64,000 bases of DNA, taken from positions 124,001 through 188,000 of the IMG/VR virus record IMGVR_UViG_3300021440_000013, one strand, 5' to 3'. Numbering within the stretch: position 1 is the stretch's first letter; every line of letters starts with the position of its first letter. Position numbers and translations under genes: made by a program. This document shows positions 39,428 through 63,201 of the stretch, piece after piece. The notes below the pieces were generated by a model. It searched no databases and was not told where the DNA came from. It was given only the letters and a program-made list of their open reading frames with translations.

Positions 39428-42400
39428 TTACATCGTTCTTCGCATATCAAGGGCGGATGAGCCAGACTTATCCTTGCGACCCAGGTTGATTCTGTCCTGT
39501 TCTTTCGGAGAAGCTTTTTCATCGCCTGCTTTAGCAGCCTTAGTGGTGGCACTTACAACCGTAGCCATCATCTCAGCCACCTTTTCAACCTTGACATTAC
39601 TCAGGATCTCACGCAGCACTACCAACGATTCTTGTTGGATACCAACAGATTTGTCTAGCGCTGTACTTAATGACCCAAATCCAGCGGCCATGCCTTCGCC
39701 CGACTCAGTGCGTCCGGTGCTAACGACCCCCGGTGTGCGGTTGTCTAAGAAAAGCCCAGAGCTAGAACTCTTAGGTTCTGGCGCCTTCTTTTGCCCCGCT
39801 GCGGGTCCGGCATTAGCAACCGCTGCTTTTTGAGCCGATACCTTTTCACCTGCCATCGGTGTACTGATCGGACTCTGAGCTGGATCGATATCAAGACCAG
39901 GTCCTTTACTTGGCGCCGCGGAGAGACCTAGCGAGCCAGTGGGTGCTTTGACACCGTAGCGGCTTGATTTCTCATTAAGCTTGGCGCTTAAGTTATCGTA
40001 GACCTGTTTAACGGTGAGGGGTTTACCATCTTTGTAAAAGATGTTTTGATTCTTCGAGGCCGGGCCTGGAAAACGATTCGCTGCAATCGCGTCAGGCGGC
40101 ATGGAAAGAAATGCTTTTGCGCCACTGGCCCCTAAGAAATGCGCCAGGTAAAGGTCAGTCAAATTTGGATTTGACTTGACCGGTGCGATGACTTTCTTAT
40201 TCTCCTTAATGTATTCAGCGGCCATCAAACTTGACGCTTCAACACTAAACGGAGACGCCGTCTTCTCTAAGCCATACTTAGAAGAATACTTAGAAACCAT
40301 CGAATCCCAGGTTGACCGAATGAACTGAAAGAGTCCCGCGGCGGAGCTTGTTGAAGCTTTGGCTTGGGGATTCATGTCTGATTCAACCGCAGCAAACGCC
40401 TGCATGAGAGCCGGGTCCTCACCTGCACGTTTGGCGTGCGATGCGATCTGGGCTTTGATGTCGCCACTTGCGCCATTTTCAGCGCTGGCGGTAGTTGCTT
40501 TCCCGCCGGTGGAGGCGGGTTTCTCTTCAGCGTCAGGTGGAGGAAGATCGTTGGTCGTTGAGTTAGCGGCAGCGGTATTTTGCGCCATTGACAGTTTAGC
40601 ATCTTTGGAAGGAGGCGTTCCTGCTTTGGCGTTTTGATCCGAGGCTTTCTTAACCGCAACGGCAGTATCGACCGTGTTGGTCGAAGTCGTTTCAGCTTTT
40701 ACCGCTTCGCTAAATTTAGGCGGAGGGAGCACCTGATCTTTTGCGGTTTGCTGTAGATTAGACGCTACGGGCGAGGGCGGGGCATTGAGTAGACCCAGTG
40801 CAACGTCTTTGTTACGCCGACCCTTTGCGCTGTTAGCCATGCTACCGTATCCGGCGCCACCACGCATGACACCCGCGCTGATCATGGCGTCTCGCAACTG
40901 ACCATTAGTTTTCGCTTCCGAAGGGTTCTTTTGGATCCCTGCGGGCTCTACGTGCCAAGGTTCTTGCCCCACGGGTCTGGTGAAACCATACTTCTTCATC
41001 AAGCCCAGTTTGTCAAGCTCGTCAGCGATCTTTGAATCGATGTCGAGCGCTAAACCAAACTCATGAAGCGAGTTGCCTGGCGCCGCAGCTCTATCGCCAT
41101 ACTTACGCTTCATCTCGACTTGTTCTTCGTAGGTGCGTACACCCGAAGTGACAAGGATGCTCTTGCCTGTATTCTTTCCATACTCCTCAGCCATCCCTAA
41201 GAAGAGCTTGAGCATGGTTGGATTAAGGCTATCGATGTTGATACCCTTTTTCTCAAACTTAACGAACTGGCGACCTGCTGTACCCTCCAAGGGTGCGCCT
41301 GGCGCCATCGCGACTTTACCCGCTCCGCCTACAAGACTCTTTTCTTCACTGCCTTGCTCGCGCGCTGTGGTGCTGGCTGGTGCCGCACCACCATCTTCAC
41401 TCTGGGTGGCCGTCTGTACCTGGGCTTTATTCTGCTCAGCGTTCTTACGGCGCTCCTCTTCGACCTTCGCTTTTTGAGCTTGGTCGATCTGACTCTCTTT
41501 TTCTTTGTCTTTAAAGACGCCGAAGGTGAGTTTGTCAAAGAGCGTTTTAGCAACCGATGTCGCGGTTGTTTCACCGAGCTTTGCAGGAGGCAGCGTTGCT
41601 TTGGTGTCTTTCGGTTTATCCGCTTTCGCCTTAGCGATCAACGCTTCGATGCTGTCCTTGACAAACTTGTTGTCCAAAGAGAGCTGGCTTAATGCTTTAA
41701 CCGGAGAGGTGTCTTCATCATAGGGGCCACTTTCAAAACCAACGAGTTCGAGATACTTGATCCGATCGTCCGGTTTAAACTTAGCCACCTCTTTGAGCTT
41801 GGCTTTGTTATTGACCGCATAGAGCGCGGTCATGTGTGTCAAGAAGAATGGCTTAAAGCGTTTATCGAACCAACGGCTAAACTTCTCGCCTTGCTCAGTA
41901 TCTTCCTTGTCAATCTTAAAGAGCTCAAGGAGTTCTTCAGATTTGACTTTCTTATCATTGATATAGGCTTTACCGTTATCGTAACCGACACGCCCATCTT
42001 CAAGATACGCTTCCAACATGAACGGGTAGTAGTTATACTGATCCACGCTCTGATTGTAACCAAAGCCATATTGGTTTAAGCGGATGCGTTCAAACTCATC
42101 CGCGTTGTTACGCGTCGCGTATTGGTAGAGTTTATAAAGTCCATAGCCGGCACCTGCTATCGCTGCCGCACCTAAAATCACTGGGCTGCTGATCACGGAA
42201 GCAACGGCCCCTATTGCACCACCGGCTACGTTTAACGCACCCATGGCAAGGCCAGGTAGGGCGCGTGTCAACGCAAAGCGCCCTAGTCCTAATGCACCCT
42301 TGCCGGCAAGCTTAGCGGCACCCCACGCGCCTTTACCAGCAAGCTTGGCTACGCCTCCCACTCCCTTAACCAGTGCACCTGGCGTCATCGCGAGAAGTTT

Positions 42401-45400
42401 ACCCGCTAAACCCATCACGCCGCCAAGACCTTTAGTGATCAAGGAGAAGAGTCCACCAAAGCCCGTCATCGCCATTTTGAGGCCATTTCCAAGCAAATCC
42501 ATCAGTCCTGTACCGCCCTTATAGCGTGCGGTCAGATCTGCTTGAGCGCCTTCTTTTTGGCGAGATGCTTTGAGTTCAGCTAACTTTTCTTCACGCTCTT
42601 CAATACTTCCGTCACGTGTACCACTTCCATCGGTGTCGTTCCAAGCACGCTTGGCCGAATCGATCTTTTGCTTAACACGTTTAAGAAGAGAAGGTTTCTT
42701 TTCAACTTGAGGTTGATTTTCGGGTGTGGCTGCCGCAGCACCTTTTTCTCCACCCTTTAAAAACCCGCCAATACTACTTGCAAGTCCACCCGCCATAGCG
42801 GCACCGGTCCCTAATAGACCGCGTGCCTTACCCTGCGCTAACTTAAAGCGACTTGGTTTGGCAGGACCCATCTGGTCTGGAAGTCTAGGCCCCACGAAAT
42901 CACCTGGACTCTGAGCCTTAGGGGTCGACCAACTCGGTTGCTTGAATCGATCCTTGGCAGCTTGAATCATCGCATCGATACGGTCCTGATACGTCTCGTT
43001 GGGTTGTAAGTCCGATATCCCTCTGTCAATCGCATCTTTTTGTCGAGCACCGGGATATATCGGTCCAACAAACTCATCTGGTCTCTGGGTCTTGGTAGCG
43101 GTGTGTTTTGTTTTTAGCGCGCTGTACTGGTATTTGGCTTTATTGAACAAGCCTTTCTTTTTGTCACCCGGCTGCATCGGACCCACAAAGTCTTCCGGTG
43201 TTCTACCCAAAAGCTTGTCTCCGAGTTCGCGTCCCTTGCCTTTTAGGTCAGTGAAGTTTTCTTTATTCTTAAAGAAATCCATTCCACGAGAGAGAAGTGA
43301 GCCTGAGCTTGTTCCGATTGCAGCAGTGCTGACTCCAGGCTGCATCGGACCCACAAAGTCCTTTGCGACCTCTTCACTGACAGCACCACCTTTACCAAAA
43401 CCAAAGAAACCCTTGATCTTGTTCTTGAGCTCTGCGGTCTTTTCTTTGATCTCAGCCGACTTGATGGCTACTTCGTCCTTAGCTTCCTTTAAAACCTCGT
43501 TCAGGTTCTTAGGCGCTTTGTCGACAGGACCGCCAGGCGGCGTTACCTTGAGCTTGGCAGATTCACGCTTCTTAATGCGTTTTAACACATTCACACGCTG
43601 GTTAAGCATGATGTCGCGGATATCGAGCAAGACCTCGTAAGTATCCTTGGCGTATTTATTTTCACCAAAGTTGATACCAAACTGACCCCAGTCGGTGGGT
43701 TGATCCCACCACTCTTTGATCTTTCCACCCATTGAGAGCGACTTATCGGTCAGGACATTAAATCCTTTTCTAGCTTTATCTCCTACCCACGCAGCCGCCT
43801 TGGTCGCTAGACGGATGACGTTGGTGACGTTTCCACGGATCTTATCACCATAGCGATCATAGAGACCCTTGGAGCGTTCTTCAAGACTCAGGATGATGTT
43901 ACCCACCGAGTCAACGATATCGCCCTTAGCCTTATTGAGCTTATCCATCGTGTCAAGCACTTCGCCCGTGACCGCGTCACGATAAAAACCCGCCTTGAGT
44001 TTAACGGCACGAATAACGGGTTCTACGCCATCAGGCAAGTACAGGTCTTTGGCTTCATTAAGCTTATCCCCAACCCAACCAAAGACTTTACTCACCTTGT
44101 CTTTGATGAACTTTAAACCATTGGGAAGTCCTTCGGTTAGAAAAGACTTCGCGCTATCGAAGACGGTGCTTGAAAAAGATGCTGCTTTTTCATAGAGCGT
44201 GCTAAACGCTTTACGCGTACCGCTCTCTTTATCGGTGAGTTGGTCTTTAAGAAAGTCTTTTGCTGAGGTGAAAAGACCCTTGGCTTTCTCGGTTTTCTCA
44301 CCCGGTGTAAAGAATTCTTTAAGCGCCTCGATTGTGCTTGAACCGGCTTTAAATCCTAGGTCCATCGTGCCGCGCATGATCGAAGTAATCATGCCGCGGA
44401 AAGTGCCATCGTGAACAAGTTGGTTTGGAATAAAGCCACCCGCACCCTGGCCACCGCTTTGCACAAGCTCACTGGCCAGCTTTTGCTGTTCGGTAAGCAG
44501 CTTTACCGTGTCAGCGGTATCTTTTTGGATCTTAGCGAGGAGCTCGTTGGTGAGCTCCTCTGCGCTCTTACCCTTGGTACGGTGACGTGAAGAGCTCTTG
44601 GGTGTGGTTTCCGGCGGTGCGGCGTCACGTTTAAAAAGACCTTCGACCTTCTCACCCAAATGTTGAATGGAAGCCATCAAGGCGCCATTCATACTTTGCA
44701 GATCGATCATCTTGCCCTTTGGTGCAACCTCTTCACCTAGGTTCTTACGCACCTCCTGAGCCATGGGTCCTGAGTGCTCTTGATCATCGCCCTTACCCGC
44801 CTGATAGTTCCAGTTAAAGAGCTTGGTCTTTTTAATACCTTCGTAGGCTTCCCTTGGATTAAAACGCTTAACCTTGTCAAAGAAACCCTCTTCTTTGTCG
44901 GGTTTAGACTTCTGTCCAAAGTAGCGTGCCGCCAAGTCTTTATAATCCTGACTCCCAGGCGCACCCTTAAAGCGATCACTGACCGCCTGGAGGAGTTCTT
45001 TTGGGTTAAGCTCTTTGATCGCTTCTTTAACGTTGATGTCCGAACGAATAAAGGCGCTGTCTTCCATGAACTTGGCGTAAGCTTCTTCATCGATGTCGTA
45101 CTTGCCGTCATCACGCTTTTTCGCTAAACCTTTCTTAGCGATTAGATCGCCATAGCCCGCCTTTTCAAACCCAGCGATGGTTTTATCAGACGAAGGTGTC
45201 CTCTTACGGATGTCCTTGATGGCTTTAGTCAGTGTGTTAGCATCGCGGTTTTTAGTATCGCTTTGCTCGCTTGAGCGAAGCTTATATTCAATTAAGTCTT
45301 GGAGTTCATCTGAGAGCTGTCCGAACGAAGGGGACGAGAGGATCGAATCAGGATCAAGTGGGTTATTACTATCCCGACTCAGCCTTGATAAGAATCGTTT

Positions 45401-47038
45401 AAGCTCGATGATTTGGTCTTCGTCGAGGTTTTCATTTTCGGTAAAGAGTTCGACGGCTTTTTCGACTATGTAGTTATAGCCGGATCTCTGGATATGGGAG
45501 GCAAGGTCTTTTTCAACCCGCGCCCCCATGTCCGTTTCACTGGTGAATTCCTTACGCTTAAAATCGTATACCTGCCGGTCGGCTTGATTTCGCCCGGTTC
45601 TTAACATGACGATTTCGCGGTGAATGTTCGCCAGGTGCCCAGGGATAATGTCGGTTAGACTGATGTGTGCTTTGGCATCAAAACCCATCGTAGGGTTATC
45701 GAGCTCATCGAGATTCGTCTCAGAACCAATACTTCGACCCGGATCCCTGTCCGTGAAGTTATCCATGAGCATGTCAAGGGCACGGAAGAACTTACCCTTA
45801 GCACCAACCTCGTTGGTTTTGTCAACCCAGTTTTGAGACTGCCTTAGTTTCTCGATAGCGCCTGCTGGGTTGTTAGCAATATTGGCAAGGCCGGCAAACT
45901 TCTCCTGGATGACCGAGTCATCACCACCGATCTGTTTGATCCGTTTAGCCATCACGTCGCGAAACCATTCCGCGATGTTGGCACCCGCCGTTGCGCCAAG
46001 CATCTCGGCTTTTGACATGGGTTCCATACCCATGTCAACCATCGATGCGTTCATTCCATCCAGCATCTCTTTAGCGTCAATGGCGCTGTCAAGCTGCATG
46101 TCGGCCGTATCGAGCGCCGAAGTAAAGCCAGAAACTGTCTGACGCGCAGTTTCTTTAAGGCGGTCCATACCTTTTTTCAGGAAGGACTTATCGCCATAGA
46201 GCGACTCAATAAACTTTTTCTTACTGACTTCTTTAAAGCGCTCGCTTTCGGTGATCTTTACGTACTCTGGCATCGCGGTGTTTTTAACCACCGCTTCCAG
46301 TTGCGTTTGGAAAACTTTGAAACTGGCCTGAGCTTTTGAGAAGTGTTCTTTTTGTGCAAGCAGCGAACGAATCTGAAGTTCAAGCGACTTGCGTTGAAAG
46401 CGCTGGTTGGTGTTAACCGTATATTGCGTCTGAATGGAGAGGCTACGCTCCATCGAGCGTTGCAGATCGAAGTTGGCATTAAAGCGCTTAGCACCGATGC
46501 GGTCTCGAATCAGGTCTTTGGCGTTATCGAGCTTACCTTGTTCTTGCTGCTGCTCAAAGACCCCTGCAAGCGACATCGCTACCGCTTGTTCTTCTTGGTT
46601 AGGGACTGTGTTCTGCTCACCACCGATGTCTATGCCACCCCAGCGTGCGATTTTCTCAGTCAGGCTTTTAAGGCGCTTAGCACTCTCTGGAACAAGCTGG
46701 TTAATCTTGGCGGTAACACGCCCGACACGGGGCTTTATTTCTCTTACCGTCTCATCGTATAGTTCGTACATCCCGGTGGTGAGCTCACCGGTTGCATCTG
46801 CCACTTCCCCGTAGCTATCAGGGAGCGTTTTGCGAAGGGTGTCCTTTACAAACTCTGGGCTAACCACCGCGTCTTTAACGCCAGACACGGTACCCATAAA
46901 GACGTTGCCAATGACACCACGCGCTTTTTTCTTACCCGTGGCTTCCTGATTAAGCTCGCCATCAATTTCATTCTCGAAGTCGAAATTAAAATCTGTATCA
47001 AACTCCGGAATATCCGAAACCAGCTCCTTCTTGGCCAT
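39428..47038 (-). CDS. Giant tail-associated peptidoglycan hydrolase / tape-measure-like protein (phiKZ gp181-like) with S74-like, M15-peptidase and SLT domains
   Basis: SLT: AAVES..NP...SSAAGLFQF...W, YLAHFLG. M15: TSGVRT..EQ...APGNSLHEFGLALDI...EPWHVE. S74-like: SDINVKE...GPMAQEV. SD GGAGG then ATG 47038. Confidence 0.85.
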   Translation of the reverse strand: MAKKELVSDIPEFDTDFNFDFENEIDGELNQEATGKKKARGVIGNVFMGTVSGVKDAVVSPEFVKDTLRKTLPDSYGEVADATGELTTGMYELYDETVREIKPRVGRVTAKINQLVPESAKRLKSLTEKIARWGGIDIGGEQNTVPNQEEQAVAMSLAGVFEQQQEQGKLDNAKDLIRDRIGAKRFNANFDLQRSMERSLSIQTQYTVNTNQRFQRKSLELQIRSLLAQKEHFSKAQASFKVFQTQLEAVVKNTAMPEYVKITESERFKEVSKKKFIESLYGDKSFLKKGMDRLKETARQTVSGFTSALDTADMQLDSAIDAKEMLDGMNASMVDMGMEPMSKAEMLGATAGANIAEWFRDVMAKRIKQIGGDDSVIQEKFAGLANIANNPAGAIEKLRQSQNWVDKTNEVGAKGKFFRALDMLMDNFTDRDPGRSIGSETNLDELDNPTMGFDAKAHISLTDIIPGHLANIHREIVMLRTGRNQADRQVYDFKRKEFTSETDMGARVEKDLASHIQRSGYNYIVEKAVELFTENENLDEDQIIELKRFLSRLSRDSNNPLDPDSILSSPSFGQLSDELQDLIEYKLRSSEQSDTKNRDANTLTKAIKDIRKRTPSSDKTIAGFEKAGYGDLIAKKGLAKKRDDGKYDIDEEAYAKFMEDSAFIRSDINVKEAIKELNPKELLQAVSDRFKGAPGSQDYKDLAARYFGQKSKPDKEEGFFDKVKRFNPREAYEGIKKTKLFNWNYQAGKGDDQEHSGPMAQEVRKNLGEEVAPKGKMIDLQSMNGALMASIQHLGEKVEGLFKRDAAPPETTPKSSSRHRTKGKSAEELTNELLAKIQKDTADTVKLLTEQQKLASELVQSGGQGAGGFIPNQLVHDGTFRGMITSIMRGTMDLGFKAGSSTIEALKEFFTPGEKTEKAKGLFTSAKDFLKDQLTDKESGTRKAFSTLYEKAASFSSTVFDSAKSFLTEGLPNGLKFIKDKVSKVFGWVGDKLNEAKDLYLPDGVEPVIRAVKLKAGFYRDAVTGEVLDTMDKLNKAKGDIVDSVGNIILSLEERSKGLYDRYGDKIRGNVTNVIRLATKAAAWVGDKARKGFNVLTDKSLSMGGKIKEWWDQPTDWGQFGINFGENKYAKDTYEVLLDIRDIMLNQRVNVLKRIKKRESAKLKVTPPGGPVDKAPKNLNEVLKEAKDEVAIKSAEIKEKTAELKNKIKGFFGFGKGGAVSEEVAKDFVGPMQPGVSTAAIGTSSGSLLSRGMDFFKNKENFTDLKGKGRELGDKLLGRTPEDFVGPMQPGDKKKGLFNKAKYQYSALKTKHTATKTQRPDEFVGPIYPGARQKDAIDRGISDLQPNETYQDRIDAMIQAAKDRFKQPSWSTPKAQSPGDFVGPRLPDQMGPAKPSRFKLAQGKARGLLGTGAAMAGGLASSIGGFLKGGEKGAAAATPENQPQVEKKPSLLKRVKQKIDSAKRAWNDTDGSGTRDGSIEEREEKLAELKASRQKEGAQADLTARYKGGTGLMDLLGNGLKMAMTGFGGLFSLITKGLGGVMGLAGKLLAMTPGALVKGVGGVAKLAGKGAWGAAKLAGKGALGLGRFALTRALPGLAMGALNVAGGAIGAVASVISSPVILGAAAIAGAGYGLYKLYQYATRNNADEFERIRLNQYGFGYNQSVDQYNYYPFMLEAYLEDGRVGYDNGKAYINDKKVKSEELLELFKIDKEDTEQGEKFSRWFDKRFKPFFLTHMTALYAVNNKAKLKEVAKFKPDDRIKYLELVGFESGPYDEDTSPVKALSQLSLDNKFVKDSIEALIAKAKADKPKDTKATLPPAKLGETTATSVAKTLFDKLTFGVFKDKEKESQIDQAQKAKVEEERRKNAEQNKAQVQTATQSEDGGAAPASTTAREQGSEEKSLVGGAGKVAMAPGAPLEGTAGRQFVKFEKKGINIDSLNPTMLKLFLGMAEEYGKNTGKSILVTSGVRTYEEQVEMKRKYGDRAAAPGNSLHEFGLALDIDSKIADELDKLGLMKKYGFTRPVGQEPWHVEPAGIQKNPSEAKTNGQLRDAMISAGVMRGGAGYGSMANSAKGRRNKDVALGLLNAPPSPVASNLQQTAKDQVLPPPKFSEAVKAETTSTNTVDTAVAVKKASDQNAKAGTPPSKDAKLSMAQNTAAANSTTNDLPPPDAEEKPASTGGKATTASAENGASGDIKAQIASHAKRAGEDPALMQAFAAVESDMNPQAKASTSSAAGLFQFIRSTWDSMVSKYSSKYGLEKTASPFSVEASSLMAAEYIKENKKVIAPVKSNPNLTDLYLAHFLGASGAKAFLSMPPDAIAANRFPGPASKNQNIFYKDGKPLTVKQVYDNLSAKLNEKSSRYGVKAPTGSLGLSAAPSKGPGLDIDPAQSPISTPMAGEKVSAQKAAVANAGPAAGQKKAPEPKSSSSGLFLDNRTPGVVSTGRTESGEGMAAGFGSLSTALDKSVGIQQESLVVLREILSNVKVEKVAEMMATVVSATTKAAKAGDEKASPKEQDRINLGRKDKSGSSALDMRRTM

Positions 47039-47089
47039 TTTTAGATAGCCTCCCATAATGTAAAGTTTAGCATCCAAAGGATCTTCGCT

Positions 47090-49116
47090 ATGAACCTTTT
47101 AGATACGGTCCCATTTAACCTGAGTCTTCTAATTCTCACGCCCGAGAATACACGTGGACTTGGGCAAGTCAAAGTGCTCGATGTTTTCTCAGCGGCCAGT
47201 AAGAACTTTCACAGTGACGGTCTTTTTAGTATCGAGACCTTTGGTAAGGTAGGGGGTGAACGCCGTAGCCGCCTCTATGGTTACATTAACCTTAATGTGC
47301 CAATCTTTCACCCTGTGCTCTATAAGAGCTTGATTGGGCTAAAGGAGCTCTACGCGCAGATCATGGCGGGTTCTGCCTACGCCAAATTTGATCCAGTAAC
47401 AAAAGACTTTGAAGCAGCCTCAATCACCGACGGTGAAACAGGCTACGCGTTCTTTGTCAGGCATTTCCAAGCGCTTCAGTTTGAGGAGCGTAAAAGTACG
47501 TCGCGTGAGTTCGCGATCAAGCTCATTAATAAATACCGCGATAAGGCTTTTATTGATAAACTCATTGTGCTTCCTGCTGGATTACGTGACTACACGATCC
47601 AGCCCAACGGTAAGCCTGAGGAAGATGAGATCAATACCCTGTATCGCAAGGTGCTCTCCAATGCTACGGTCATTGGGACTCAGTCAAAGAGCGATCTGAC
47701 CCATATTGACTCAACCCGTTATGGGCTTCAGAATGCGGTACAGGAGGTCTTTAGTTACATCGTGAACTTGCTTGAGGGGAAGGGTAAGTTGATCCAAGGC
47801 TGGTGGACTAACCGAAACGTTCACAACAGCACACGCAATGTGATCACAGCGATCGTCCCCAAGTCTAATGAACTGGGGGACGAACACACCATTTCCCCAA
47901 ACCACACCGTCGTGGGGATCTATCAGCAGATTCGTGCGATTTTTCCGATCTCGATCAATCTGATCCGTGAGATGGCGGGTATGGTTTTTTCAGGTCCTAA
48001 TAACCCAGCGCGGCTAATCGATCCAAAAACACTTCTAGGTGAGACGGTCTCGATTGATCCGGTTCATTTTGATGAGTGGATGACCCAGGAAGGGATCGAG
48101 TCCATTTTAAACCGTTTTGAGATCGAGGCGCTTCGACACGACGAAGTTAAGGTGGGTGGACATTACTTCGCTCTGCTTTACAATGACGGTAAACGCGTCA
48201 AACTCTTTCACGGCTTGCAAGAGCTGCCAGATGGGTTTGACAAGGCATTCGTTAAACCGGTTAGCTATGCAGAGCTGTTCTACTTAGCGGTCTATAAACG
48301 TGTCAGGGAGATCCCTGCGTTTGTGACACGTTACCCCGTGATCGGCTATGGTGGTATCTACCCAAGCTTCGTCTATATGAAAACGACCACGCACAGTCAA
48401 TCTTTGCGTGTTTTAGATGACGCGTGGCAAGAAAGTGGCGATGTCGCTAATGAGTTCCCAATTCGCGGTGTACCTTTCGTTAATTCACTGAGTGTCTCCG
48501 GAGCCCACTTAGGCCGGCTCGGGGCTGATTGACAACGAGTGTAATAATTGATGCTAGAGTTTAGCATCTCGTTGTTTGTCCGATTTTGTAGAAATGCAAA
48601 ATTGATCCTCCTTTAACTGCTGGAACCCACTAAAGCTGTGTCACCACATGCGTCACGAAAGTAGACGTAGACGGTTTAAAAACGACATGGATGATCCGAT
48701 TGACTCGGTGAAATGGGGAACCGTGGAGTGAAACACTCCCTTTAGCAGCCAAGCTCCTAAGGCGTAAGCTATGGAGAAGGTTCAACGATCAGCCCTTAAG
48801 CAAGGGGTAGGCTCAAGCGAGCCGAAACGGGGAGCACCTGACCGGTTGATGCCGAAGGTGAAGATATGATCTGTTCTGCATGCAAAACATGCAGCGTATG
48901 CGGGTAATGCTGCGGGGAGAAGGGTAGCGTCTTTTCTTGAACAACAAGTTCGACGGGGATGTCATGTCGTTTGTACCGGTGATGACCGATGAGTCTATCG
49001 CAGAAGTTACGAAACTCTTGGCCAGTCGCGACTACTATGTGGGTGTCGATGGCAAGATGGTATTTAGCTCTTCTAACGATGTCTCTGAGTTGGTTTTCTC
49101 AGAGATGACCAGTTAA
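47090..49116 (+). CDS. Virion RNA polymerase beta' subunit (phiKZ gp180-like); spliced join(47090..48529,48949..49116), 535 aa
   Basis: DGLFSIETFG, LPAGLR, LEGKGKLIQ, TRYP motifs. Catalytic LGAD|FDGD is restored by removing the intron. Exon 2 = FDGDVMSFVPVMTDESIAEV...EMTS*. Confidence 0.9.
48530..48948 (+). ncRNA. Group I self-splicing intron (419 nt, no homing endonuclease ORF)
   Basis: 5' exon ends in U and intron ends in G. P AACTGCTGGAAC (48615), Q TAGCAGCCAAG (48743), R GTTCAACGATCA (48780), S AAGATATGATCT (48861). P2 with GAAA loop, P9 hairpin, P9.0 TGTTC/GAACA. Confidence 0.92.
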
Positions 49117-49131
49117 GGAAAAGTGGTTAAA

Positions 49132-49662
49132 ATGAACCCAGTTGTTTTAAAGAACACACTTTGGAATGCGCTGGCAAAGTTTCTTCTTAGAAAGAAACTT
49201 GCCGCCATCACCAGTAATCGAGGTATTGAACTTGATCGTGACGAGAAGATCGTCATTCGGTCGTTTGAAGGCACCGCTATTAAAGGTCCTGATAAAGGGT
49301 TTTTTAACAAGTTGATCTGGACCTTCTTTTTAAATGAACTTGACGGAGTCATTGGGGATGCTCGGTGGAACCCTGAGCGTAAAGACACACTTCTGATCCG
49401 TCTTAAATGGTGGTTTAGAAATCCGTGCCATAACTTCACGTGGCATGTAATCGGATTTGCCCAGAAGCTGAGCACTCGGGTCGACTTCCAAGCCGAAGAC
49501 GGACCTGGGTGGAATTACGCGATGACCCTCATCAAAGGTCTGGATGATAAGTTTACACTCTACCCCTACTTTCTTTATCTTTCTTCTAAGATAAAGTTTT
49601 ACATCGGGTGGCGTGGCCGTGGAACCTTCGGAATTAAGTTCAACATTAAGACAGGTGAGTAA
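49132..49662 (+). CDS. Hypothetical Trp/aromatic-rich phage protein
   Basis: WWFRNPCHNF and FYIGWR motifs; lies between two RNAP subunit genes. Confidence 0.7.
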   Translation: MNPVVLKNTLWNALAKFLLRKKLAAITSNRGIELDRDEKIVIRSFEGTAIKGPDKGFFNKLIWTFFLNELDGVIGDARWNPERKDTLLIRLKWWFRNPCHNFTWHVIGFAQKLSTRVDFQAEDGPGWNYAMTLIKGLDDKFTLYPYFLYLSSKIKFYIGWRGRGTFGIKFNIKTGE

Positions 49663-49665
49663 ATT

Positions 49666-52600
49666 ATGAAACCTATTTTTAAGGTACTTTATCGGGCAGA
49701 GGGTATTCGCTACAGCGATCGGCTTTTGAACCTCCCGCAGTATAAGCTGACGCAGTTTCCACGAGGGTCTCTTTTTCACAGCGTCGATTACACGCATCTA
49801 CACCCAGACGTAGAGGCTGCTCAGCCCTATTTCACGGGTTATAGCAAGAAGATCTTGGTTGATCATCTTACGCACTATGAGGCTCTTAAAGGCCCCGCTC
49901 GCCAAATCACCTTCAACATCAATCAAGCCACACGGACGTGGCGTCAAAGCCACCGTGCTCTCTGGAGTGAGCTTGAAGCGCCGTATCGTACAGAGCAAAA
50001 TCCTGACGCACTCATTGTCGTAAACTACGGTTATCTGGACAAAGCCCACATTTACCAAAAGGTGCAGTTGGCAGAATATTACCGCTGGTACAATCTCTTT
50101 GATACGCTTTACCGAAAAGTCAACGAGATCGCCGCCGTAAGTGATCGTCATCAGTTCTTGTTTTATCCTTTGCCAAAACTATTACAAGGCCGGGCAATCC
50201 TTCAGAAGTTTGAAAAAGAAGGCGAAGGCTCAATTCGAACGGTGTCGTTCTTTGGCCAAGGTGGAGATGCCAGTTATCTCTTTTTGGACCTTTGGAAATG
50301 GTTAGGTGTTAAGCACCGCGCTAATAGCCTTTTATCACATATCTATCCGAAACATTACGCCAAAGTCAACTTGATCTTCCAGGGTAGTTCAGGTAATCAA
50401 GTTTGGATTAACTTGGGGTATCTGAACAGTTGGATCAAGGGTCAAGAAAACGCAACCGAATTTAACAGTGTCACGCAGTTTGATGCGGAGTTGATCCAAA
50501 AACTCTACCTTCGAATGGCGATGAGTTTGAACTCGGTGGTGACTGAGCCTGAAGTGCTGCCCGATGAAGCGGTTGAAATCAACCAAAGTGTCCCTGTGCC
50601 GAAGGTTTCTGAAGAACCTTCGGCAGGTAGCGTTGACGAAACCAGTCTTGACACCGAGAGCGCGGCGCTTCCCAGTGACGAAGAAGAGAACCCCAACGCA
50701 GGACAATCACTCCTTCGAGTCAACCTTAAAGCAGGCGCTAAAACCGAGGTGGCGGCGCTGGATAAAAAGAGCGATGAGCTTCCCGTTGAGGACCTCACCA
50801 AACTCATGCTCGATGAGCTTGAAAAAGACATGGAGGCACTGGATCGCATCAGTCTTGTTCACCTTAAGAATAGTGGTGAAAAAATGGATGCGACAGGCGG
50901 TCCGGCGGTTGAAATCACGCTGGATAGCCGTAGTGTAAGAGAAGAAGTTTATAAGACACTGAGCGCTGAAGAAGCGCTTAAGAGCCGTATCCGTGAAGAC
51001 GCTGAGGCGAATCTCATTACCGCTTCGGATTACCGTAAGTATGAAGAGGCGATCAAAGCGTACCAAGAAAGCCCTGATCCTTACGGTGGAAAAGAGCCGC
51101 GCATTAAAGCGATGGTGATTAAACCCGAAGAACTCATCATCACTCCCGAAGAAAGTAAGATCGTCTTGACGAGCGCAACGCCTGACACCACAATGGGTGA
51201 AAGCACGCTGAAGACGTTCGATAAGAAATACATTCGAACGGTTCACCGTAAGGACATCTTACAAGCGATCGACGCGATCCAAGGAACCGGTGTGGTGATC
51301 CGTAACCACGAGGTGGAAATCCGGCATAGCGTCCTAGGTGTGTATGAGCACCACCGACTTGAAATCAAACCGATCGATGGTGCGCCGTCCACGCTTCAGT
51401 TTACGCTTCCTGTGGTCGAGGAGGACGGCACCTTTACAGCAGGAGGAAACAAATACCTTCTGCGTCGTCAACGGGTCGACAACGTTATTCGTAAGATCGC
51501 GCCTCAGATCGTCTCGCTCTCGACCTATTACGGTAAGACGTTTATTCAAACGTCGCCTAAGATGTCAAGCAGCAGTCTAGTCTGGCTCTTTAGACAGATT
51601 AACCTACAGGCGCTCTCGGGTGAAGGCCTTATCAGAGACGTTAACCCAGGCAATGCGTTTGATAACGATTACACCGCACCGTACATCTATAACGCACTTG
51701 CCAGTGAGTTTGAATCGATGAGCGTCGGAGACATTAAGCTCATCTTCGATCACAAAGCCGCAAGGAAGCTTCTTAACGAAGGCCAAGGGTATCCGCGATC
51801 TTTGTTTGCAGATGGGGCTGTGTTTTGCGGTGTGGACAGCAAGGGGAATTATATCCGGGTTGACCGCGATAATCACTTTCAGCGCTTTAGTGACAAAGGG
51901 GTGGAGGAGCTCGGTGATTTTGCCAGCTTGGCTAAGCTGGATGTCGAAAAAGCACCGATCGATTTTGCTGAGATGCGGGTGTTTTCCAAGTATGTGCCTG
52001 TGGGGCTCATCCTTGGCTACTATGTGGGCTTTAAACGCCTTATCGCGCTTCTGGACGAGCCGTACCGTGTGGTTGAGGGGCGTAAGAATAAAGGCTTGGC
52101 GCCTAACGAATACGCGGTAAGTTTCCAGGATGTGAGCTACATCTTTAAAACGACAGACCGCGTTAGCACACTGATCCTCTCAGGCTTTATGGAGTATGAA
52201 AAGATCATCAAGATGTTTGAGGCTAAGGAGTTTGACCATAAAGAAGTCTATCTCAACGTCTTAATGGCGAAGAAGATGAGTGCCATCTATGTGCGTGAGC
52301 TCGACATGATGGAGTCGGCCTTTATTGATCCGATTAGTCGTGAGATCTTGGCTGAGATGAAAGAGCCGACCAGCTTTATTCCGCTGCTGGTAAGAGCCGT
52401 AGAACTCCTCACTACGTTTGAACACCCTGCATCGCAAGACCGCTCTGCTATGCGTGACCGGGGCTATGAGCGTTTTGCAGGCACGATCTACAAAGAACTG
52501 ACCCAGGCGGTTCGGCAGTTTAGGAATAAGAATCTCGTAGGGCGCTCTAAGGTCGATATGAGTCCGTTCCAGATCTGGAACGCCTTAATGAAGGACAATT

Positions 52601-54027
52601 CCTTAAAGATCGTTGAGGACACCAACCCGATCCAGAGTTTAAAAGAACAGGAGGTCATCACCTTTACCGGCACAGGAGGTCGTAATAAAGACACGATGAC
52701 CAAAGAGACGCGCGCGTATCACCCGAACGATGTGGGTATTCTGTCTGAGTCGACTGTCGACAGCACCTCTGTGGGGACCATCGCGTACCTCTCTGCAAAC
52801 CCGAACATCAAAAATGTTCGGGGTATCGCAAAAGATGAGAAGGTCTTTAACCCGACGACGATCCTCTCAACCAGCGCACTTTTATCACCCGCCGCAATGA
52901 ACGACAATCCCAAGCGTGTTATGTTTATCACCACGCAGCATTCGCATACGATCGGCTCAAGTGGCTATAAGCAACCTCGACTCCGAACAGGGTATGAGTT
53001 TGTGATTGGGAAACGGACTCCGAAGCTCTTCTCTAGCGCGGCTGAAGAAGACGGTGTTGTGCTGAGTATTGCGGAAAAAGGCATGGTGGTGCGTTATGCC
53101 TCAGGTAAAGAAGTAGGTCTTGAATTAGGTCGACTTCACGGTAAAGCAGAAGGAACGGTGTACCCTCATGATCTCGTCACCTCTTTAGCAGTCGGTGCTA
53201 AGTTTAAAGCAGGCGATATTCTTAGCTATAACACCAAGTTCTTTGAGCCTGATTTTATAAACCCCAAAGAAGTGGTGCTAAAAGTGAACGATGTCGTCAG
53301 AACCGCGTTCATGGAAAACAACTTAACACATGAAGACTCGTGCTCGATTTCTCAGAGCCTGGGTAAGCGTTTTGAAACCGAGGTGATGAAGGTTAAGTCA
53401 TACGTGGTGAAGTTCCAACAAAACCTTCTCGAAGTCATTAAGCTGGGTGCTCGGGTAGACCCAAAGACCGTCTTGATGATCATTGAGGATGAGATCACCG
53501 CGAACACCGGTGCGTTTAGCGAAGACAGCTTAGCGACACTTAAACGCCTTTCAAATGCTGCGCCTAAGGCTGGCGTGATGGGTATCGTTGAAAAGATCGA
53601 AGTGTTCTATCATGGCGACAAACGTGACATGACGGCGTCGATCAAAAAGCTCGCCGATAAATCCGATCAAGACATGGCTCAAGCGGCTAAGAGTGTCGGT
53701 AAGCCCGTTGTTTCGGGGCGTGTTACCGACGAATATCGCGTGGCGGGTTCTCCGCTTGAACTCGATTACGCTGAAGTGAAAATCTACATCTCCGTTAAAG
53801 CGGGTACGGGCGTAGGTGATAAAGCGGTCTTTGGTCATCAGATGAAGTCGACGATCGCCGAAGTGATGGCCGAACCGATCCATACCGAAGCGGGTGAGAT
53901 CGTAGAGGCGACGTTTGGTTACCGCTCTGTGGCTAACCGCGGTGTTCTCTCTCCTTCAATCATTGGCACCACCATCACGCTTCTGGATGTGGTGGGTAAG
54001 AAAGCGGTTGAGCTTTACGAAGCATAA
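49666..54027 (+). CDS. Virion RNA polymerase beta subunit, large fragment (phiKZ gp178-like)
   Basis: 1453 aa; TFTGTGGR, LSESTVDS..VG, HEDS, GVGDK...HQMKST beta motifs. Confidence 0.9.
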   Translation: MKPIFKVLYRAEGIRYSDRLLNLPQYKLTQFPRGSLFHSVDYTHLHPDVEAAQPYFTGYSKKILVDHLTHYEALKGPARQITFNINQATRTWRQSHRALWSELEAPYRTEQNPDALIVVNYGYLDKAHIYQKVQLAEYYRWYNLFDTLYRKVNEIAAVSDRHQFLFYPLPKLLQGRAILQKFEKEGEGSIRTVSFFGQGGDASYLFLDLWKWLGVKHRANSLLSHIYPKHYAKVNLIFQGSSGNQVWINLGYLNSWIKGQENATEFNSVTQFDAELIQKLYLRMAMSLNSVVTEPEVLPDEAVEINQSVPVPKVSEEPSAGSVDETSLDTESAALPSDEEENPNAGQSLLRVNLKAGAKTEVAALDKKSDELPVEDLTKLMLDELEKDMEALDRISLVHLKNSGEKMDATGGPAVEITLDSRSVREEVYKTLSAEEALKSRIREDAEANLITASDYRKYEEAIKAYQESPDPYGGKEPRIKAMVIKPEELIITPEESKIVLTSATPDTTMGESTLKTFDKKYIRTVHRKDILQAIDAIQGTGVVIRNHEVEIRHSVLGVYEHHRLEIKPIDGAPSTLQFTLPVVEEDGTFTAGGNKYLLRRQRVDNVIRKIAPQIVSLSTYYGKTFIQTSPKMSSSSLVWLFRQINLQALSGEGLIRDVNPGNAFDNDYTAPYIYNALASEFESMSVGDIKLIFDHKAARKLLNEGQGYPRSLFADGAVFCGVDSKGNYIRVDRDNHFQRFSDKGVEELGDFASLAKLDVEKAPIDFAEMRVFSKYVPVGLILGYYVGFKRLIALLDEPYRVVEGRKNKGLAPNEYAVSFQDVSYIFKTTDRVSTLILSGFMEYEKIIKMFEAKEFDHKEVYLNVLMAKKMSAIYVRELDMMESAFIDPISREILAEMKEPTSFIPLLVRAVELLTTFEHPASQDRSAMRDRGYERFAGTIYKELTQAVRQFRNKNLVGRSKVDMSPFQIWNALMKDNSLKIVEDTNPIQSLKEQEVITFTGTGGRNKDTMTKETRAYHPNDVGILSESTVDSTSVGTIAYLSANPNIKNVRGIAKDEKVFNPTTILSTSALLSPAAMNDNPKRVMFITTQHSHTIGSSGYKQPRLRTGYEFVIGKRTPKLFSSAAEEDGVVLSIAEKGMVVRYASGKEVGLELGRLHGKAEGTVYPHDLVTSLAVGAKFKAGDILSYNTKFFEPDFINPKEVVLKVNDVVRTAFMENNLTHEDSCSISQSLGKRFETEVMKVKSYVVKFQQNLLEVIKLGARVDPKTVLMIIEDEITANTGAFSEDSLATLKRLSNAAPKAGVMGIVEKIEVFYHGDKRDMTASIKKLADKSDQDMAQAAKSVGKPVVSGRVTDEYRVAGSPLELDYAEVKIYISVKAGTGVGDKAVFGHQMKSTIAEVMAEPIHTEAGEIVEATFGYRSVANRGVLSPSIIGTTITLLDVVGKKAVELYEA

Positions 54028-63147: not shown

Positions 63148-63169
63148 TTTGTAATTGCACTTATCATCA

Positions 63170-63201
63170 CAGACAGGAGGGCCGCAAAGCCCTCCTGTCT
63201 G
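63170..63201. terminator. Intergenic hairpin
   Basis: CAGACAGGAGGGC...GCCCTCCTGTCTG, T-rich stretch nearby. Confidence 0.65.

What the first reader, a model, noticed from the sequence alone, without database searches (positions are those of the whole stretch)
48530..48948. ORF-less group I intron splits the catalytic DFDGD motif of the virion RNA polymerase
Seen: the ORF stops at ...HLGRLGAD-TGA, and 419 nt later an unannotated frame resumes with FDGDVMSF... (55 aa). The intervening sequence has the U-end exon and terminal G, recognisable P/Q/R/S elements, P9.0, and a P7 helix with compensatory changes (GATCA/TGATC instead of the usual GACTA/TAGTC). The first three intron bases form an in-frame TGA. 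Established: the three Asp of (N/G)ADFDGD bind the catalytic Mg of multisubunit RNAPs. Inference: the packaged RNAP that starts the next infection depends on ribozyme splicing, and unspliced mRNA gives a catalytically dead 480-aa subunit. The intron encodes no endonuclease, so it is either a stranded remnant, mobilised in trans, or protects this site from a competitor's homing endonuclease. An extra stem (ACAACGAG/CTCGTTGT plus a GATGCTA/TAGCATC hairpin) sits next to the 5' splice site and could modulate splicing.
Basis: partly seen in the sequence, partly recalled or inferred. Interest (0 to 1): 0.85.

Follow-up and report, generated by a model that had tools for sequence, protein, structure and literature searches.

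The report
Endonuclease-less intron in phage polymerase gene
A 419-base self-splicing (group I) intron interrupts the catalytic-site codons of a giant phage's virion RNA polymerase gene. It is real and looks intact, but phiKZ and many relatives carry an intron at the same site, so this is an ordinary copy of a known element that has lost its homing-endonuclease gene.

Summary
The ORF at 47090-48529 ends ...GAD followed by TGA, and FDGD... resumes at 48949. The two pieces match PHROG 2986 at positions 5-484 and 485-539 with no gap. The 419 nt between them (48530-48948) is a group I intron. It has the U.G splice-site pair in P1, a terminal G, and helices P2-P9 and P9.0, all canonical in the window and covarying across 17 homologous introns. 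P7 is paired in 17/17.

It scores below Rfam's gathering threshold (29.6 vs 50 bits, E 1e-5). However, it aligns with the phiKZ gp180 intron (92 bits), which sits at exactly the same GAT|TTC position.

The nearest relatives (94% and 88% protein identity) carry a 367-aa HNH endonuclease ORF in the P1 loop. The window lacks about 1,085 nt there. The next relative (73%) has no intron.

Of 122 related loci, 35 are interrupted within 13 nt of this motif. Nineteen use this site, and 13 of those have no ORF.

Verdict: a new member of a known kind, of modest interest. Splicing is inferred, not shown.

The parts
47090..48529 (+). Exon 1 of the virion RNAP beta'-N subunit gene (480 codons, ends GAD; last base U48529)
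   Evidence: ORF list. phrog_2986 profile positions 5-484, E 1.6e-161. 38% identity to phiKZ gp180, E 2e-107.
48530..48948 (+). Group I intron, 419 nt, with no endonuclease ORF
   Evidence: RF00028 over the full model, 29.6 bits. 84% identical in the ribozyme core to the endonuclease-bearing intron of L005. Covariation in alignment A2. Longest ORF 32 aa.
48530..48532 (+). In-frame TGA, the first three intron bases. It would stop translation of unspliced RNA after GAD.
   Evidence: Sequence. Relatives have TAA or an early stop at the same place.
48527..48539 (+). P1 5' strand: exon GAU (48527-48529), unpaired U48530, then GACAACGAG
   Evidence: Pairs with 48568-48580. The same register holds in L005, L004, L083 and L084 with different sequences. 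Recovered in the MFE fold.
48540..48567 (+). L1 loop of P1. The first 13 nt (48540-48552) are shared with endonuclease-bearing relatives. A cap hairpin follows, GATGCTA (48550-48556) / TAGCATC (48562-48568). This is the place where relatives hold the 367-aa HNH ORF.
   Evidence: Alignment with L005 and L004. The distal 15 nt cannot be assigned to any part of the relatives' endonuclease region.
48568..48580 (+). P1 3' strand with the internal guide sequence. G48578 pairs with splice-site U48529, U48579 with A48528, and C48580 with G48527.
   Evidence: GUCC is invariant in all 17 cores. Pairing table.
48582..48603 (+). P2 hairpin (48582-48589 / 48596-48603)
   Evidence: RNAalifold: 8 pairs, all with compensatory changes in relatives.
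48608..48613 (+). P3 5' strand; pairs with 48829-48834
   Evidence: 6 pairs, CG to UA covariation at four of them.
48617..48748 (+). P4 (48617-48622 / 48743-48748) enclosing the P5 peripheral extension. The extension includes a covarying helix, 48636-48641 / 48685-48690.
   Evidence: The 116-nt insertion relative to the Rfam model explains the low score.
48754..48776 (+). P6 (48754-48757 / 48773-48776) with a GUAA-capped tip
   Evidence: 4 pairs, all covarying.
48787..48791 (+). P7 5' strand GAUCA (part of the R element GUUCAACGAUCA). G48787-C48871 is the presumed guanosine-binding pair.
   Evidence: Pairs with 48867-48871. 17/17 paired at all 5 positions and two positions covary.
48794..48823 (+). 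P7.1 (48794-48797 / 48802-48805) and P7.2 (48810-48814 / 48819-48823), both with AAGC loops; a subgroup IA-type insertion
48835..48860 (+). P8 (48835-48839 / 48856-48860 and 48843-48845 / 48852-48854)
   Evidence: covarying.
48861..48871 (+). J8/7 (AAGAUA) and the P7 3' strand UGAUC (48867-48871); the S element
   Evidence: Rfam alignment. Invariant columns. P7 count.
48874..48875 (+). P9.0 5' side (UU); pairs with A48946-A48947 just before the terminal G
   Evidence: 17/17 paired at both positions, three pair types each.
48876..48894 (+). P9 hairpin CUGCAUG / CAUGCAG
   Evidence: 7 pairs, 6 of them with compensatory changes in relatives.
48895..48947 (+). 3' peripheral region: conserved GUAAUGCUGCGGG, a terminal hairpin, and GAACAACAA
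   Evidence: The hairpin stems differ completely between relatives but stay self-complementary. Column counts were unreliable because of misalignment.
48948..48948 (+). Terminal guanosine (omega-G), the 3' splice site
   Evidence: Invariant in 17/17.
48949..49116 (+). Exon 2: FDGDVMSF..., 55 codons plus TAA
   Evidence: phrog_2986 profile positions 485-539. Contiguous with exon 1 in intron-less relatives.
39428..47077 (-). Context: 2,549-aa virion protein, counterpart of phiKZ gp181 (SLT domain in relatives)
   Evidence: The order gp181 / gp180 / gp178 is the same as in phiKZ.
49666..54027 (+). Context: uninterrupted virion RNAP beta subunit gene (phiKZ gp178 counterpart), 1,453 aa
   Evidence: phrog_3148, E 0. 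No second group I match in the window.

Best explanation
Window 48530-48948 is a self-splicing group I intron of subgroup IA type, with P7.1 and P7.2. [quoted passage not shown]

Inferred mechanism:
- The pre-mRNA folds into the ribozyme.
- Exogenous guanosine binds at the G48787-C48871 pair of P7. It attacks after U48529, which is held in P1 as a U.G wobble with G48578.
- The freed 3' OH then attacks after G48948, which is positioned by P9.0.
- The result is GCU GAU|UUC GAC and a 535-aa subunit with an intact Mg-binding loop.
- Unspliced RNA would be translated only to the TGA at 48530.

Inferred history: the intron belongs to the same lineage as the phiKZ gp180/gp179 intron. Its ancestor carried an HNH homing endonuclease ORF in the P1 loop. 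This copy has lost about 1,085 nt there and can no longer home on its own, but its ribozyme has stayed under purifying selection because the host gene needs it.
For: Shown:
- The two exon pieces are exactly contiguous on the family profile and in intron-less alleles.
- Given U at -1 and G at the intron end, only one splice solution restores D.DGD.
- The full-length RF00028 match has E 1.4e-5.
- Across 17 homologous cores, 44 of 62 RNAalifold pairs carry compensatory changes.
- P7 and P9.0 are paired in 17/17 and covary.
- P1 keeps its register with unrelated sequences in L083 and L084.
- All 59 consensus pairs are canonical in the window. Against L005, 47 are the same, 3 changed on one side, 9 are compensatory and 0 are broken.
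- The ribozyme core is 84% identical to L005, while exon third positions are only about 50% identical.
- phiKZ carries an intron at the same GAT|TTC position, scoring 92 bits in Rfam.
- Relatives at 94% and 88% protein identity have a 367-aa HNH_3 ORF in L1. That ORF is 46-48% identical to those of L084 and phiKZ gp179.
- The window shares the first 23 and the last roughly 385 intron bases with L005 and lacks what lies between.
- The host protein is the orthologue of virion gp180 and not of gp55, and gene order matches phiKZ.
Against: - The Rfam score is below the gathering threshold (29.6 vs 50).
- There are no RNA data for this uncultured phage, so splicing is not shown.
- For the phiKZ introns, one long-read transcriptome study reported no spliced reads under its conditions (PMC10914365).
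- I found no P10 pairing with the 3' exon when inspecting the sequence by eye.
- The deletion breakpoints cannot be mapped, because 15 nt of L1 match nothing in relatives. Loss of the ORF therefore rests on parsimony.
Confidence: 0.9

Rival explanations
1. The ORF-less intron is kept for a benefit rather than being a passive leftover. One version: it splits the target of HNH endonucleases carried by co-infecting relatives and so protects the virion RNAP gene, a defence against the interference competition shown for PhiPA3 gp210. Another version: it is spread in trans by those endonucleases.
For: - 35 of 122 related loci are interrupted within 13 nt of this motif, at six or more positions.
- Alleles with an endonuclease gene circulate in close relatives.
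- A second phage from the same metagenome carries two ORF-less introns in this motif.
- An intron endonuclease aimed at a virion RNAP gene gives a competitive advantage in PhiPA3 versus phiKZ (PMC11620839).
Against:
- The endonucleases have HNH_3 plus weak I-HmuI/NUMOD-like matches. From my own knowledge, I-HmuI-type enzymes recognise mainly the downstream exon and can nick intron-containing DNA too, so occupying the site need not protect it.
- The flanking exons show no co-conversion tract. Exon identity near the junction (66-72%) is lower than elsewhere.
- Ribozyme conservation is explained fully by the need to splice an essential gene.
Confidence: 0.2
2. The ORF-less form is ancestral, and the HNH ORF was gained later by relatives. 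On this view the window's intron never lost anything.
For: ORF-less introns are the majority at this site (13 of 19). The distal L1 sequence has no detectable remnant of an endonuclease gene.
Against: - Homologous HNH ORFs (46-48% identity) sit in the same loop in L004, L005, L084 and phiKZ. These hosts span 38-94% identity to the window protein.
- The window's two nearest relatives both carry the ORF.
- The window shares the 13 nt of L1 that precede the ORF in those relatives.
Confidence: 0.1
3. It is a decayed intron that no longer splices, so the gene is a pseudogene or gives only the truncated 480-aa protein.
For: The Rfam score is below threshold. There is no endonuclease gene and no RNA evidence.
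Against: - All 59 consensus pairs are canonical, none is broken relative to L005, and 9 changes are compensatory.
- All invariant core positions are retained.
- The core is 84% identical while synonymous sites are about 50% identical.
- Both exons are intact, and so are the neighbouring beta subunit and gp181-like genes.
- L005 and L083, which are clearly homologous, also score below threshold.
Confidence: 0.04
4. It is a split gene without splicing. The 480-aa piece and a separately translated 59-aa piece (TTG at 48937) would assemble non-covalently.
For: An ORF 48937-49116 with a TTG start exists.
Against: - The TTG lies in the conserved GAACAACAAG 3' end of the ribozyme and is there for RNA reasons.
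- I saw no Shine-Dalgarno sequence upstream when reading the sequence.
- This model would not explain a covarying 419-nt ribozyme with exact U/G boundaries.
- Intron-less relatives encode one chain.
Confidence: 0.02

Closest known systems
Group I intron in phiKZ gene 180 (virion RNAP beta'-N) carrying the HNH endonuclease gp179
   Same: - Identical insertion point, GAT|TTC between GAD and FDGD.
- Orthologous host gene and the same gene order.
- Alignable ribozyme with the same GUCC guide, P2-P9, P7.1/P7.2, P9.0 and 3' end.
- The endonuclease gene sits in the P1 loop, as in the window's closest relatives. L005's endonuclease is 46% identical to gp179.
   Different: - The window has no ORF (419 vs 1,443 nt).
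- P7 is GAUCA/UGAUC instead of GACUA/UAGUC.
- The window has a longer P5 extension and a lower Rfam score (29.6 vs 92 bits).
- The host proteins are only 38% identical.
PhiPA3 gp210 intron in the virion RNAP beta gene gp211/209 (Birkholz et al. 2024, PMC11620839)
   Same: A group I intron in a chimallivirus virion RNAP gene, placed at conserved catalytic aspartates and associated with an HNH endonuclease. It is the experimental model for what such introns do during co-infection.
   Different: - It is in a different subunit (beta, the phiKZ gp178 counterpart) and at a different site.
- It carries an active endonuclease.
- The window's beta gene is uninterrupted.
phiKZ gp55/gp56 intron (non-virion RNAP beta')
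   Same: It interrupts the same catalytic motif, after the N of NADFDGD. Its 3' end is almost identical to that of the gp180 intron.
   Different: It lies in a paralogous polymerase, 6 nt upstream in the motif, and carries an endonuclease gene.
Phage subgroup IA introns (T4 td, nrdB, sunY; SPO1, Twort and Staphylococcus phage introns) and the endonuclease gain-decay-loss cycle (Goddard and Burt)
   Same: - The core sequence elements are shared; blastn of the core hits Staphylococcus, Vibrio and E. coli phage introns.
- An early in-frame stop follows the 5' splice site.
- The insertion is at active-site codons of an essential gene.
- All three states coexist among close relatives: empty, endonuclease-bearing and ORF-less.
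   Different: The endonuclease gene is in the P1 loop rather than P6, P8 or P9 (my recollection of the T4 cases). The host gene is a multisubunit RNAP. Formal subgroup assignment was not tested.

Membership tests
Group I intron (Rfam RF00028) | The last exon base is U, paired as a U.G wobble with an internal guide sequence in P1 | tested here: met
   U48529.G48578, A48528-U48579 and G48527-C48580. GUCC is invariant in 17 cores. The same register holds in L005, L004, L083 and L084 with different intron-side sequences.
Group I intron (Rfam RF00028) | Terminal guanosine at the 3' splice site, positioned by P9.0 | tested here: met
   G48948 is invariant. P9.0 (48874-48875 / 48946-48947) is paired in 17/17 with three pair types at each position.
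Group I intron (Rfam RF00028) | Conserved core helices P3-P8 with the P3/P7 pseudoknot and a G-C guanosine-binding pair in P7 | tested here: met
   RNAalifold: 44 of 62 pairs have compensatory changes. P7 is paired in 17/17 with an invariant G-C and two covarying positions. All 59 pairs are canonical in the window.
Group I intron (Rfam RF00028) | Score at or above the curated gathering threshold (50 bits) | tested here: not met
   29.6 bits, E 1.4e-5 locally and 0.0013 window-wide. Homologues at the same site form a graded series: phiKZ 92, L088 56, L005 42, L083 26 bits. The shortfall comes from insertions in P5 and P7.1/7.2 and a misaligned P1.
Group I intron (Rfam RF00028) | Removal restores the host reading frame | tested here: met
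   Profile positions 484|485 are contiguous. There is a single U/G solution that gives GADFDGD. Intron-less alleles exist.
Group I intron (Rfam RF00028) | Guanosine-dependent self-splicing | not testable with these tools
   Needs in vitro transcription and a splicing assay, or RNA from an infection.
Subgroup IA group I introns | Extra helices P7.1 and P7.2 between P7 and the 3' strand of P3 | tested here: met
   48794-48805 and 48810-48823, both supported by RNAalifold with covariation. No formal subgroup classifier was run.
Mobile (homing) group I intron | An intron-encoded homing endonuclease gene | tested here: not met
   The longest ORF is 32 aa. There is no homologue of the relatives' HNH ORF anywhere in the window. 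Relatives L004, L005, L084 and phiKZ have the ORF.
phiKZ-type virion RNAP beta'-N subunit (phiKZ gp180, phrog_2986) | Sequence orthology to gp180 rather than to the non-virion gp55, with the catalytic xADFDGD loop | tested here: met
   E 2e-107 to gp180, no significant match to gp55. phrog_2986 E 1.6e-161. Gene order is gp181-like / beta'-N / beta. PDB profile hit to a phage RNAP beta' chain, 7S01_d.
phiKZ-type virion RNAP beta'-N subunit (phiKZ gp180, phrog_2986) | The protein is packaged in the virion | not testable with these tools
   Inferred from orthology. phiKZ gp180 and gp178 are annotated as structural head proteins.

The most novel reading that the evidence does not exclude
The 13 nt encoding A-D-F-D-G of the chimallivirus virion RNAP beta' gene may be a contested homing hotspot. 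It has six or more insertion positions, about 29% occupancy, and two phages with two introns flanking a 6-nt micro-exon. On this reading, ORF-less introns such as this one persist because they blunt or exploit the HNH endonucleases of co-infecting relatives. They would then be standing immunity in phage-phage interference competition rather than neutral relics.
Probability: 0.15. Interest if true: 0.55.

Novelty: new member of a known kind. Interest (0 to 1): 0.28.

Why it matters
For annotation, the 480-aa and 55-aa pieces are one gene and should be joined. Gene callers split this subunit in about 40% of its relatives in public protein databases: 48 of the best 120 hits end at or just after the motif.

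For biology, the locus adds a clean natural series of the homing cycle in one gene of an uncultured jumbo phage lineage. The series runs from empty site, to intron with an HNH endonuclease gene, to the same intron without it. This is the kind of gene already shown to be a target of intron-endonuclease warfare between phiKZ and PhiPA3.

The finding itself does not open a new question. The same intron site has been annotated in phiKZ since its genome was published.

Tried and rejected
- Rfam at gathering threshold gave no hit in the window. Only the permissive search found the intron.
- Megablast of 48000-49400 against 50,697 phage records found nothing. The phage has no close cultured relative.
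- The search for related loci with the single protein returned only the window's own contig.
- An unconstrained search for the best P1 partner was noisy and gave false guides. It was replaced by anchoring on the invariant GUCC.
- I tried to map the deletion breakpoints by aligning the distal 15 nt of L1 to the relatives' endonuclease region. It scored no better than shuffles. My earlier by-eye match to the ORF start (ATGCT..AGA..TTTAG) is therefore dropped.
- I looked for a co-conversion tract, meaning raised exon identity next to the intron. There is none.
- I looked for a free-standing homologue of the HNH endonuclease in the window. There is none.
- Column-based pair counts for the terminal P9.1/9.2 hairpin failed because MAFFT misaligns it. 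Its support is per-sequence self-complementarity only.
- RNAalifold paired the guide UCC with the conserved GCGGG near the 3' end. I treat this as an artefact of leaving out the P1 5' strand. The pair has no covariation either way.
- Ceyssens et al. 2014 (PMC4178840) is not held in the library, so the primary evidence for phiKZ splicing could not be read.
- I did not submit a long dot-bracket string to the count of structure pairs. The pair counts were made in scripts instead.
Full report
**1. What is in the sequence**

The + strand ORF 47090-48532 encodes 480 aa ending HLGRLGAD, followed by TGA. At 48949 a frame with no proper start codon reads FDGDVMSF... for 55 codons, ending at TAA 49114-49116.

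PHROG family 2986 ('RNA polymerase beta subunit', 539 positions) matches the first piece at profile positions 5-484 (E 1.6e-161). It matches the second piece at 485-539 (E 6e-11). The two pieces therefore abut exactly on the family profile. The 419 nt between them begin after a U (48529) and end with a G (48948).

**2. The host gene**

The first piece is 38% identical over its whole length to phiKZ gp180 (E 2e-107). It has no significant similarity to gp55, the beta'-N subunit of the non-virion polymerase.

Gene order matches phiKZ gp181 / gp180 / gp178:
- a 2,549-aa protein on the minus strand upstream, whose counterparts in relatives carry an SLT domain;
- the beta'-N gene;
- a 1,453-aa beta gene (phrog_3148) downstream.

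The GenBank record annotates gp180 and gp178 as structural head proteins. A profile of the family hits one solved structure, a phage RNAP beta' chain (7S01_d).

'Virion RNAP beta'-N subunit' is therefore supported by orthology. Packaging itself is inferred.

The window comes from an uncultured 216,876-bp viral contig, IMGVR_UViG_3300021440_000013. It has no near relative among 50,697 phage records; the best protein identity there is about 44%.

**3. The insert is a group I intron**

Rfam at gathering threshold finds nothing in the window. With permissive filters, RF00028 matches 48551-48894 over the full model at 29.6 bits (gathering score 50). The E-value is 1.4e-5 for the 701-nt search and 0.0013 for the whole window against all families.

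The low score is explained by a 116-nt insertion in P5, the P7.1/P7.2 insertion and a misaligned P1.

Homologous introns at the same site form a graded series: phiKZ 92 bits, L088 56, L005 42, the window 29.6 and L083 25.7.

I aligned 17 ribozyme cores, from the guide-sequence G to the terminal G, all from introns at this site (A2). The structural results:
- RNAalifold predicts P2, P3, P4, a P5 helix, P6, P7.1, P7.2, P8 and P9. Of its 62 pairs, 44 have compensatory changes.
- P7 is pseudoknotted and so invisible to RNAalifold. It is paired in 17/17 at all five positions, with two covarying positions: GAUCA/UGAUC in the window, GACCA/UGGUC in L005 and GACUA/UAGUC in phiKZ.
- P9.0 (48874-48875 with 48946-48947) is paired in 17/17, with three pair types at each position.
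- The plain MFE fold of the window sequence recovers P1 through P9, with z = -2.5.

**4. P1 and the 'extra stem'**

GUCC is invariant in all cores. G48578 pairs with the splice-site U48529, U48579 with A48528 and C48580 with G48527. U48530 is unpaired. G48531 to G48539 then pair with 48568-48576.

The same register holds in relatives with different sequences:
- L005: ACAACGUG / CGCGUUGU
- L004: ACAACGUU / AGCGUUGU
- L084: UGCGAAUAC / GUAUUCGUU
- L083: CUUUGAAUGG / CCUAUUUGAAA

The GATGCTA/TAGCATC hairpin (48550-48568) caps the P1 loop.

**5. Relatives show all three states**

A search with exon 1 found 668 relatives. Of the best 120, 48 are 460-504 aa long and end at or just after GAD or GADxD. 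The other 72 are 529-547 aa long. For 28 of these a strict pattern search confirmed a contiguous xADFDGD; the rest were judged by length and their C-terminal sequence.

The states among the nearest relatives:
- The two closest relatives (94% and 88% identity, L004 and L005) have the same 480-aa exon 1, followed by a 367-aa HNH_3 ORF and then the ribozyme.
- The L005 intron is 1,503 nt long, and its ORF starts 57 nt after the splice site.
- The next relative (73%, L006-L008) is intron-less.

The window's first 23 intron bases and its last roughly 385 align with L005. The roughly 1,085 nt between them in L005, which hold the ORF, are absent from the window.

The HNH ORFs of L005, L084 and phiKZ gp179 are 46-48% identical to one another and occupy the same loop. 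By parsimony, the window has lost the ORF.

The exact breakpoints cannot be mapped, because 15 nt of L1 match nothing in the relatives. No homologue of the endonuclease lies elsewhere in the window.

**6. The ribozyme looks functional**

All 59 consensus pairs are canonical in the window. Compared with L005, 47 are unchanged, 3 changed on one side and stayed paired, 9 changed on both sides and stayed paired, and none is broken.

Exon 1 is 77-80% identical at the nucleotide level to L005 and L004, with third codon positions at about 50%. The ribozyme core is 81-84% identical. The RNA has therefore been under purifying selection since these lineages split.

Identity is not raised in the exon sequence next to the intron, so there is no sign of recent homing.

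**7. It is already known in kind**

phiKZ gp180, annotated as 490 aa, ends ...LAPLGAD followed by TAA. Next come gp179 (an HNH protein), a ribozyme core, and then ...CATAACG|TTCGACGGGGAC, which encodes FDGDTVSF... for 58 codons before gp178. This is the same GAT|TTC insertion point as in the window.

The literature lists phiKZ introns in gp55 and gp180, with the endonucleases gp56, gp72 and gp179 (PMC11512511). Birkholz et al. showed that a PhiPA3 intron endonuclease attacks the phiKZ virion RNAP beta gene (PMC11620839).

One caveat applies. A long-read transcriptome of phiKZ found no spliced reads under its conditions (PMC10914365). I could not read the 2014 RNA-seq paper. In vivo splicing of this intron family is therefore thinly documented in what I could access.

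**8. Survey of the site**

I fetched related loci from IMG/VR, JGI metagenomes and Logan assemblies. In 122 unique loci both exons are visible. Of these, 87 are intron-less and 35 are interrupted.

Requiring U at -1, G at the intron end and a restored D.DGD gives a single solution for each of 32 loci. The positions, relative to the window's site, are:

| Position (nt) | Loci |
|---|---|
| -3 | 1 |
| 0 (the window's site) | 19 |
| +1 | 4 |
| +2 | 1 |
| +6 | 5 |
| +9 | 2 |

At position 0, 13 of the 19 introns have no ORF of 150 aa or more. The ORF-less state is therefore the common one.

**9. Mechanism and status of each step**

Shown:
- the boundaries;
- the fold and its conservation;
- homology to the endonuclease-bearing introns, including phiKZ's;
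- absence of an ORF;
- orthology of the host gene.

Inferred:
- guanosine-initiated two-step splicing that gives a 535-aa subunit;
- a truncated 480-aa product from unspliced RNA;
- loss rather than gain of the endonuclease gene;
- virion packaging.

Not tested: whether this phage forms a nucleus. If it does, splicing would be uncoupled from translation.

**10. Verdict**

The 'modulating extra stem' is P1 plus its cap, and the novelty was overestimated. The intron is a new, endonuclease-less member of the phiKZ gp180-type intron lineage.

Noticed in passing
L015:4932-5685 (IMGVR_UViG_3300021440_000015, same metagenome as the window) and L013:4935-5830: Two group I introns sit in the same DFDGD-coding stretch, separated by a 6-nt micro-exon TTCGAT (Phe-Asp; L015 5341-5346, L013 5461-5466). 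All four introns pass Rfam's gathering score at 64-80 bits.
   Followed up: partly
122 related loci (L009-L166), junction region of the beta'-N gene: Introns occupy at least six positions (-3, 0, +1, +2, +6, +9 nt) within the 13 nt encoding A-D-F-D-G, and 35 of 122 loci are interrupted. Intron-less alleles use GAC for the first Asp in 67 of 87 loci. Every intron allele at the window's site uses GAT, as the U.G splice-site pair requires.
   Followed up: partly
L167:2186-3545 (phiKZ NC_004629 about 49185-50544): The phiKZ non-virion RNAP beta' gene gp55 is interrupted after the N of NADFDGD (AAT|GGACAA ... CAATACG|GCTGATTTTGACGGCGAT) by the intron holding gp56. The last roughly 50 nt of that intron are almost identical to those of the gp180 intron.
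   Followed up: partly
L088:6938-7349: A 67%-identical relative has a second group I intron (50.8 bits) about 2 kb downstream, apparently inside the beta subunit gene. The window's beta gene is uninterrupted.
   Followed up: no
L050:4965-6203 and L117:4499-5773: Introns at position +1 carry ORFs with DUF723 / DUF4379 treble-clef domains instead of HNH_3. A different endonuclease type is therefore associated with a site 1 nt away.
   Followed up: no
window 49123-49662 (+): A 179-aa DUF7338 gene lies between the beta'-N and beta genes. It is conserved at that place in close relatives (L005, L006) but absent from the phiKZ arrangement.
   Followed up: no
window 63148-63199 (+): Near-threshold Rfam match to the Caulobacter sRNA CC0196 (RF01519): 32 bits against a gathering score of 35, E 0.003.
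   Followed up: no
window 48904-48914 and alignment A2 columns 495-505: A conserved GUAAUGCUGCGGG motif lies near the intron's 3' end. RNAalifold pairs its GGG with the UCC of the guide sequence, with no covariation either way. Its role is unexplained.
   Followed up: no
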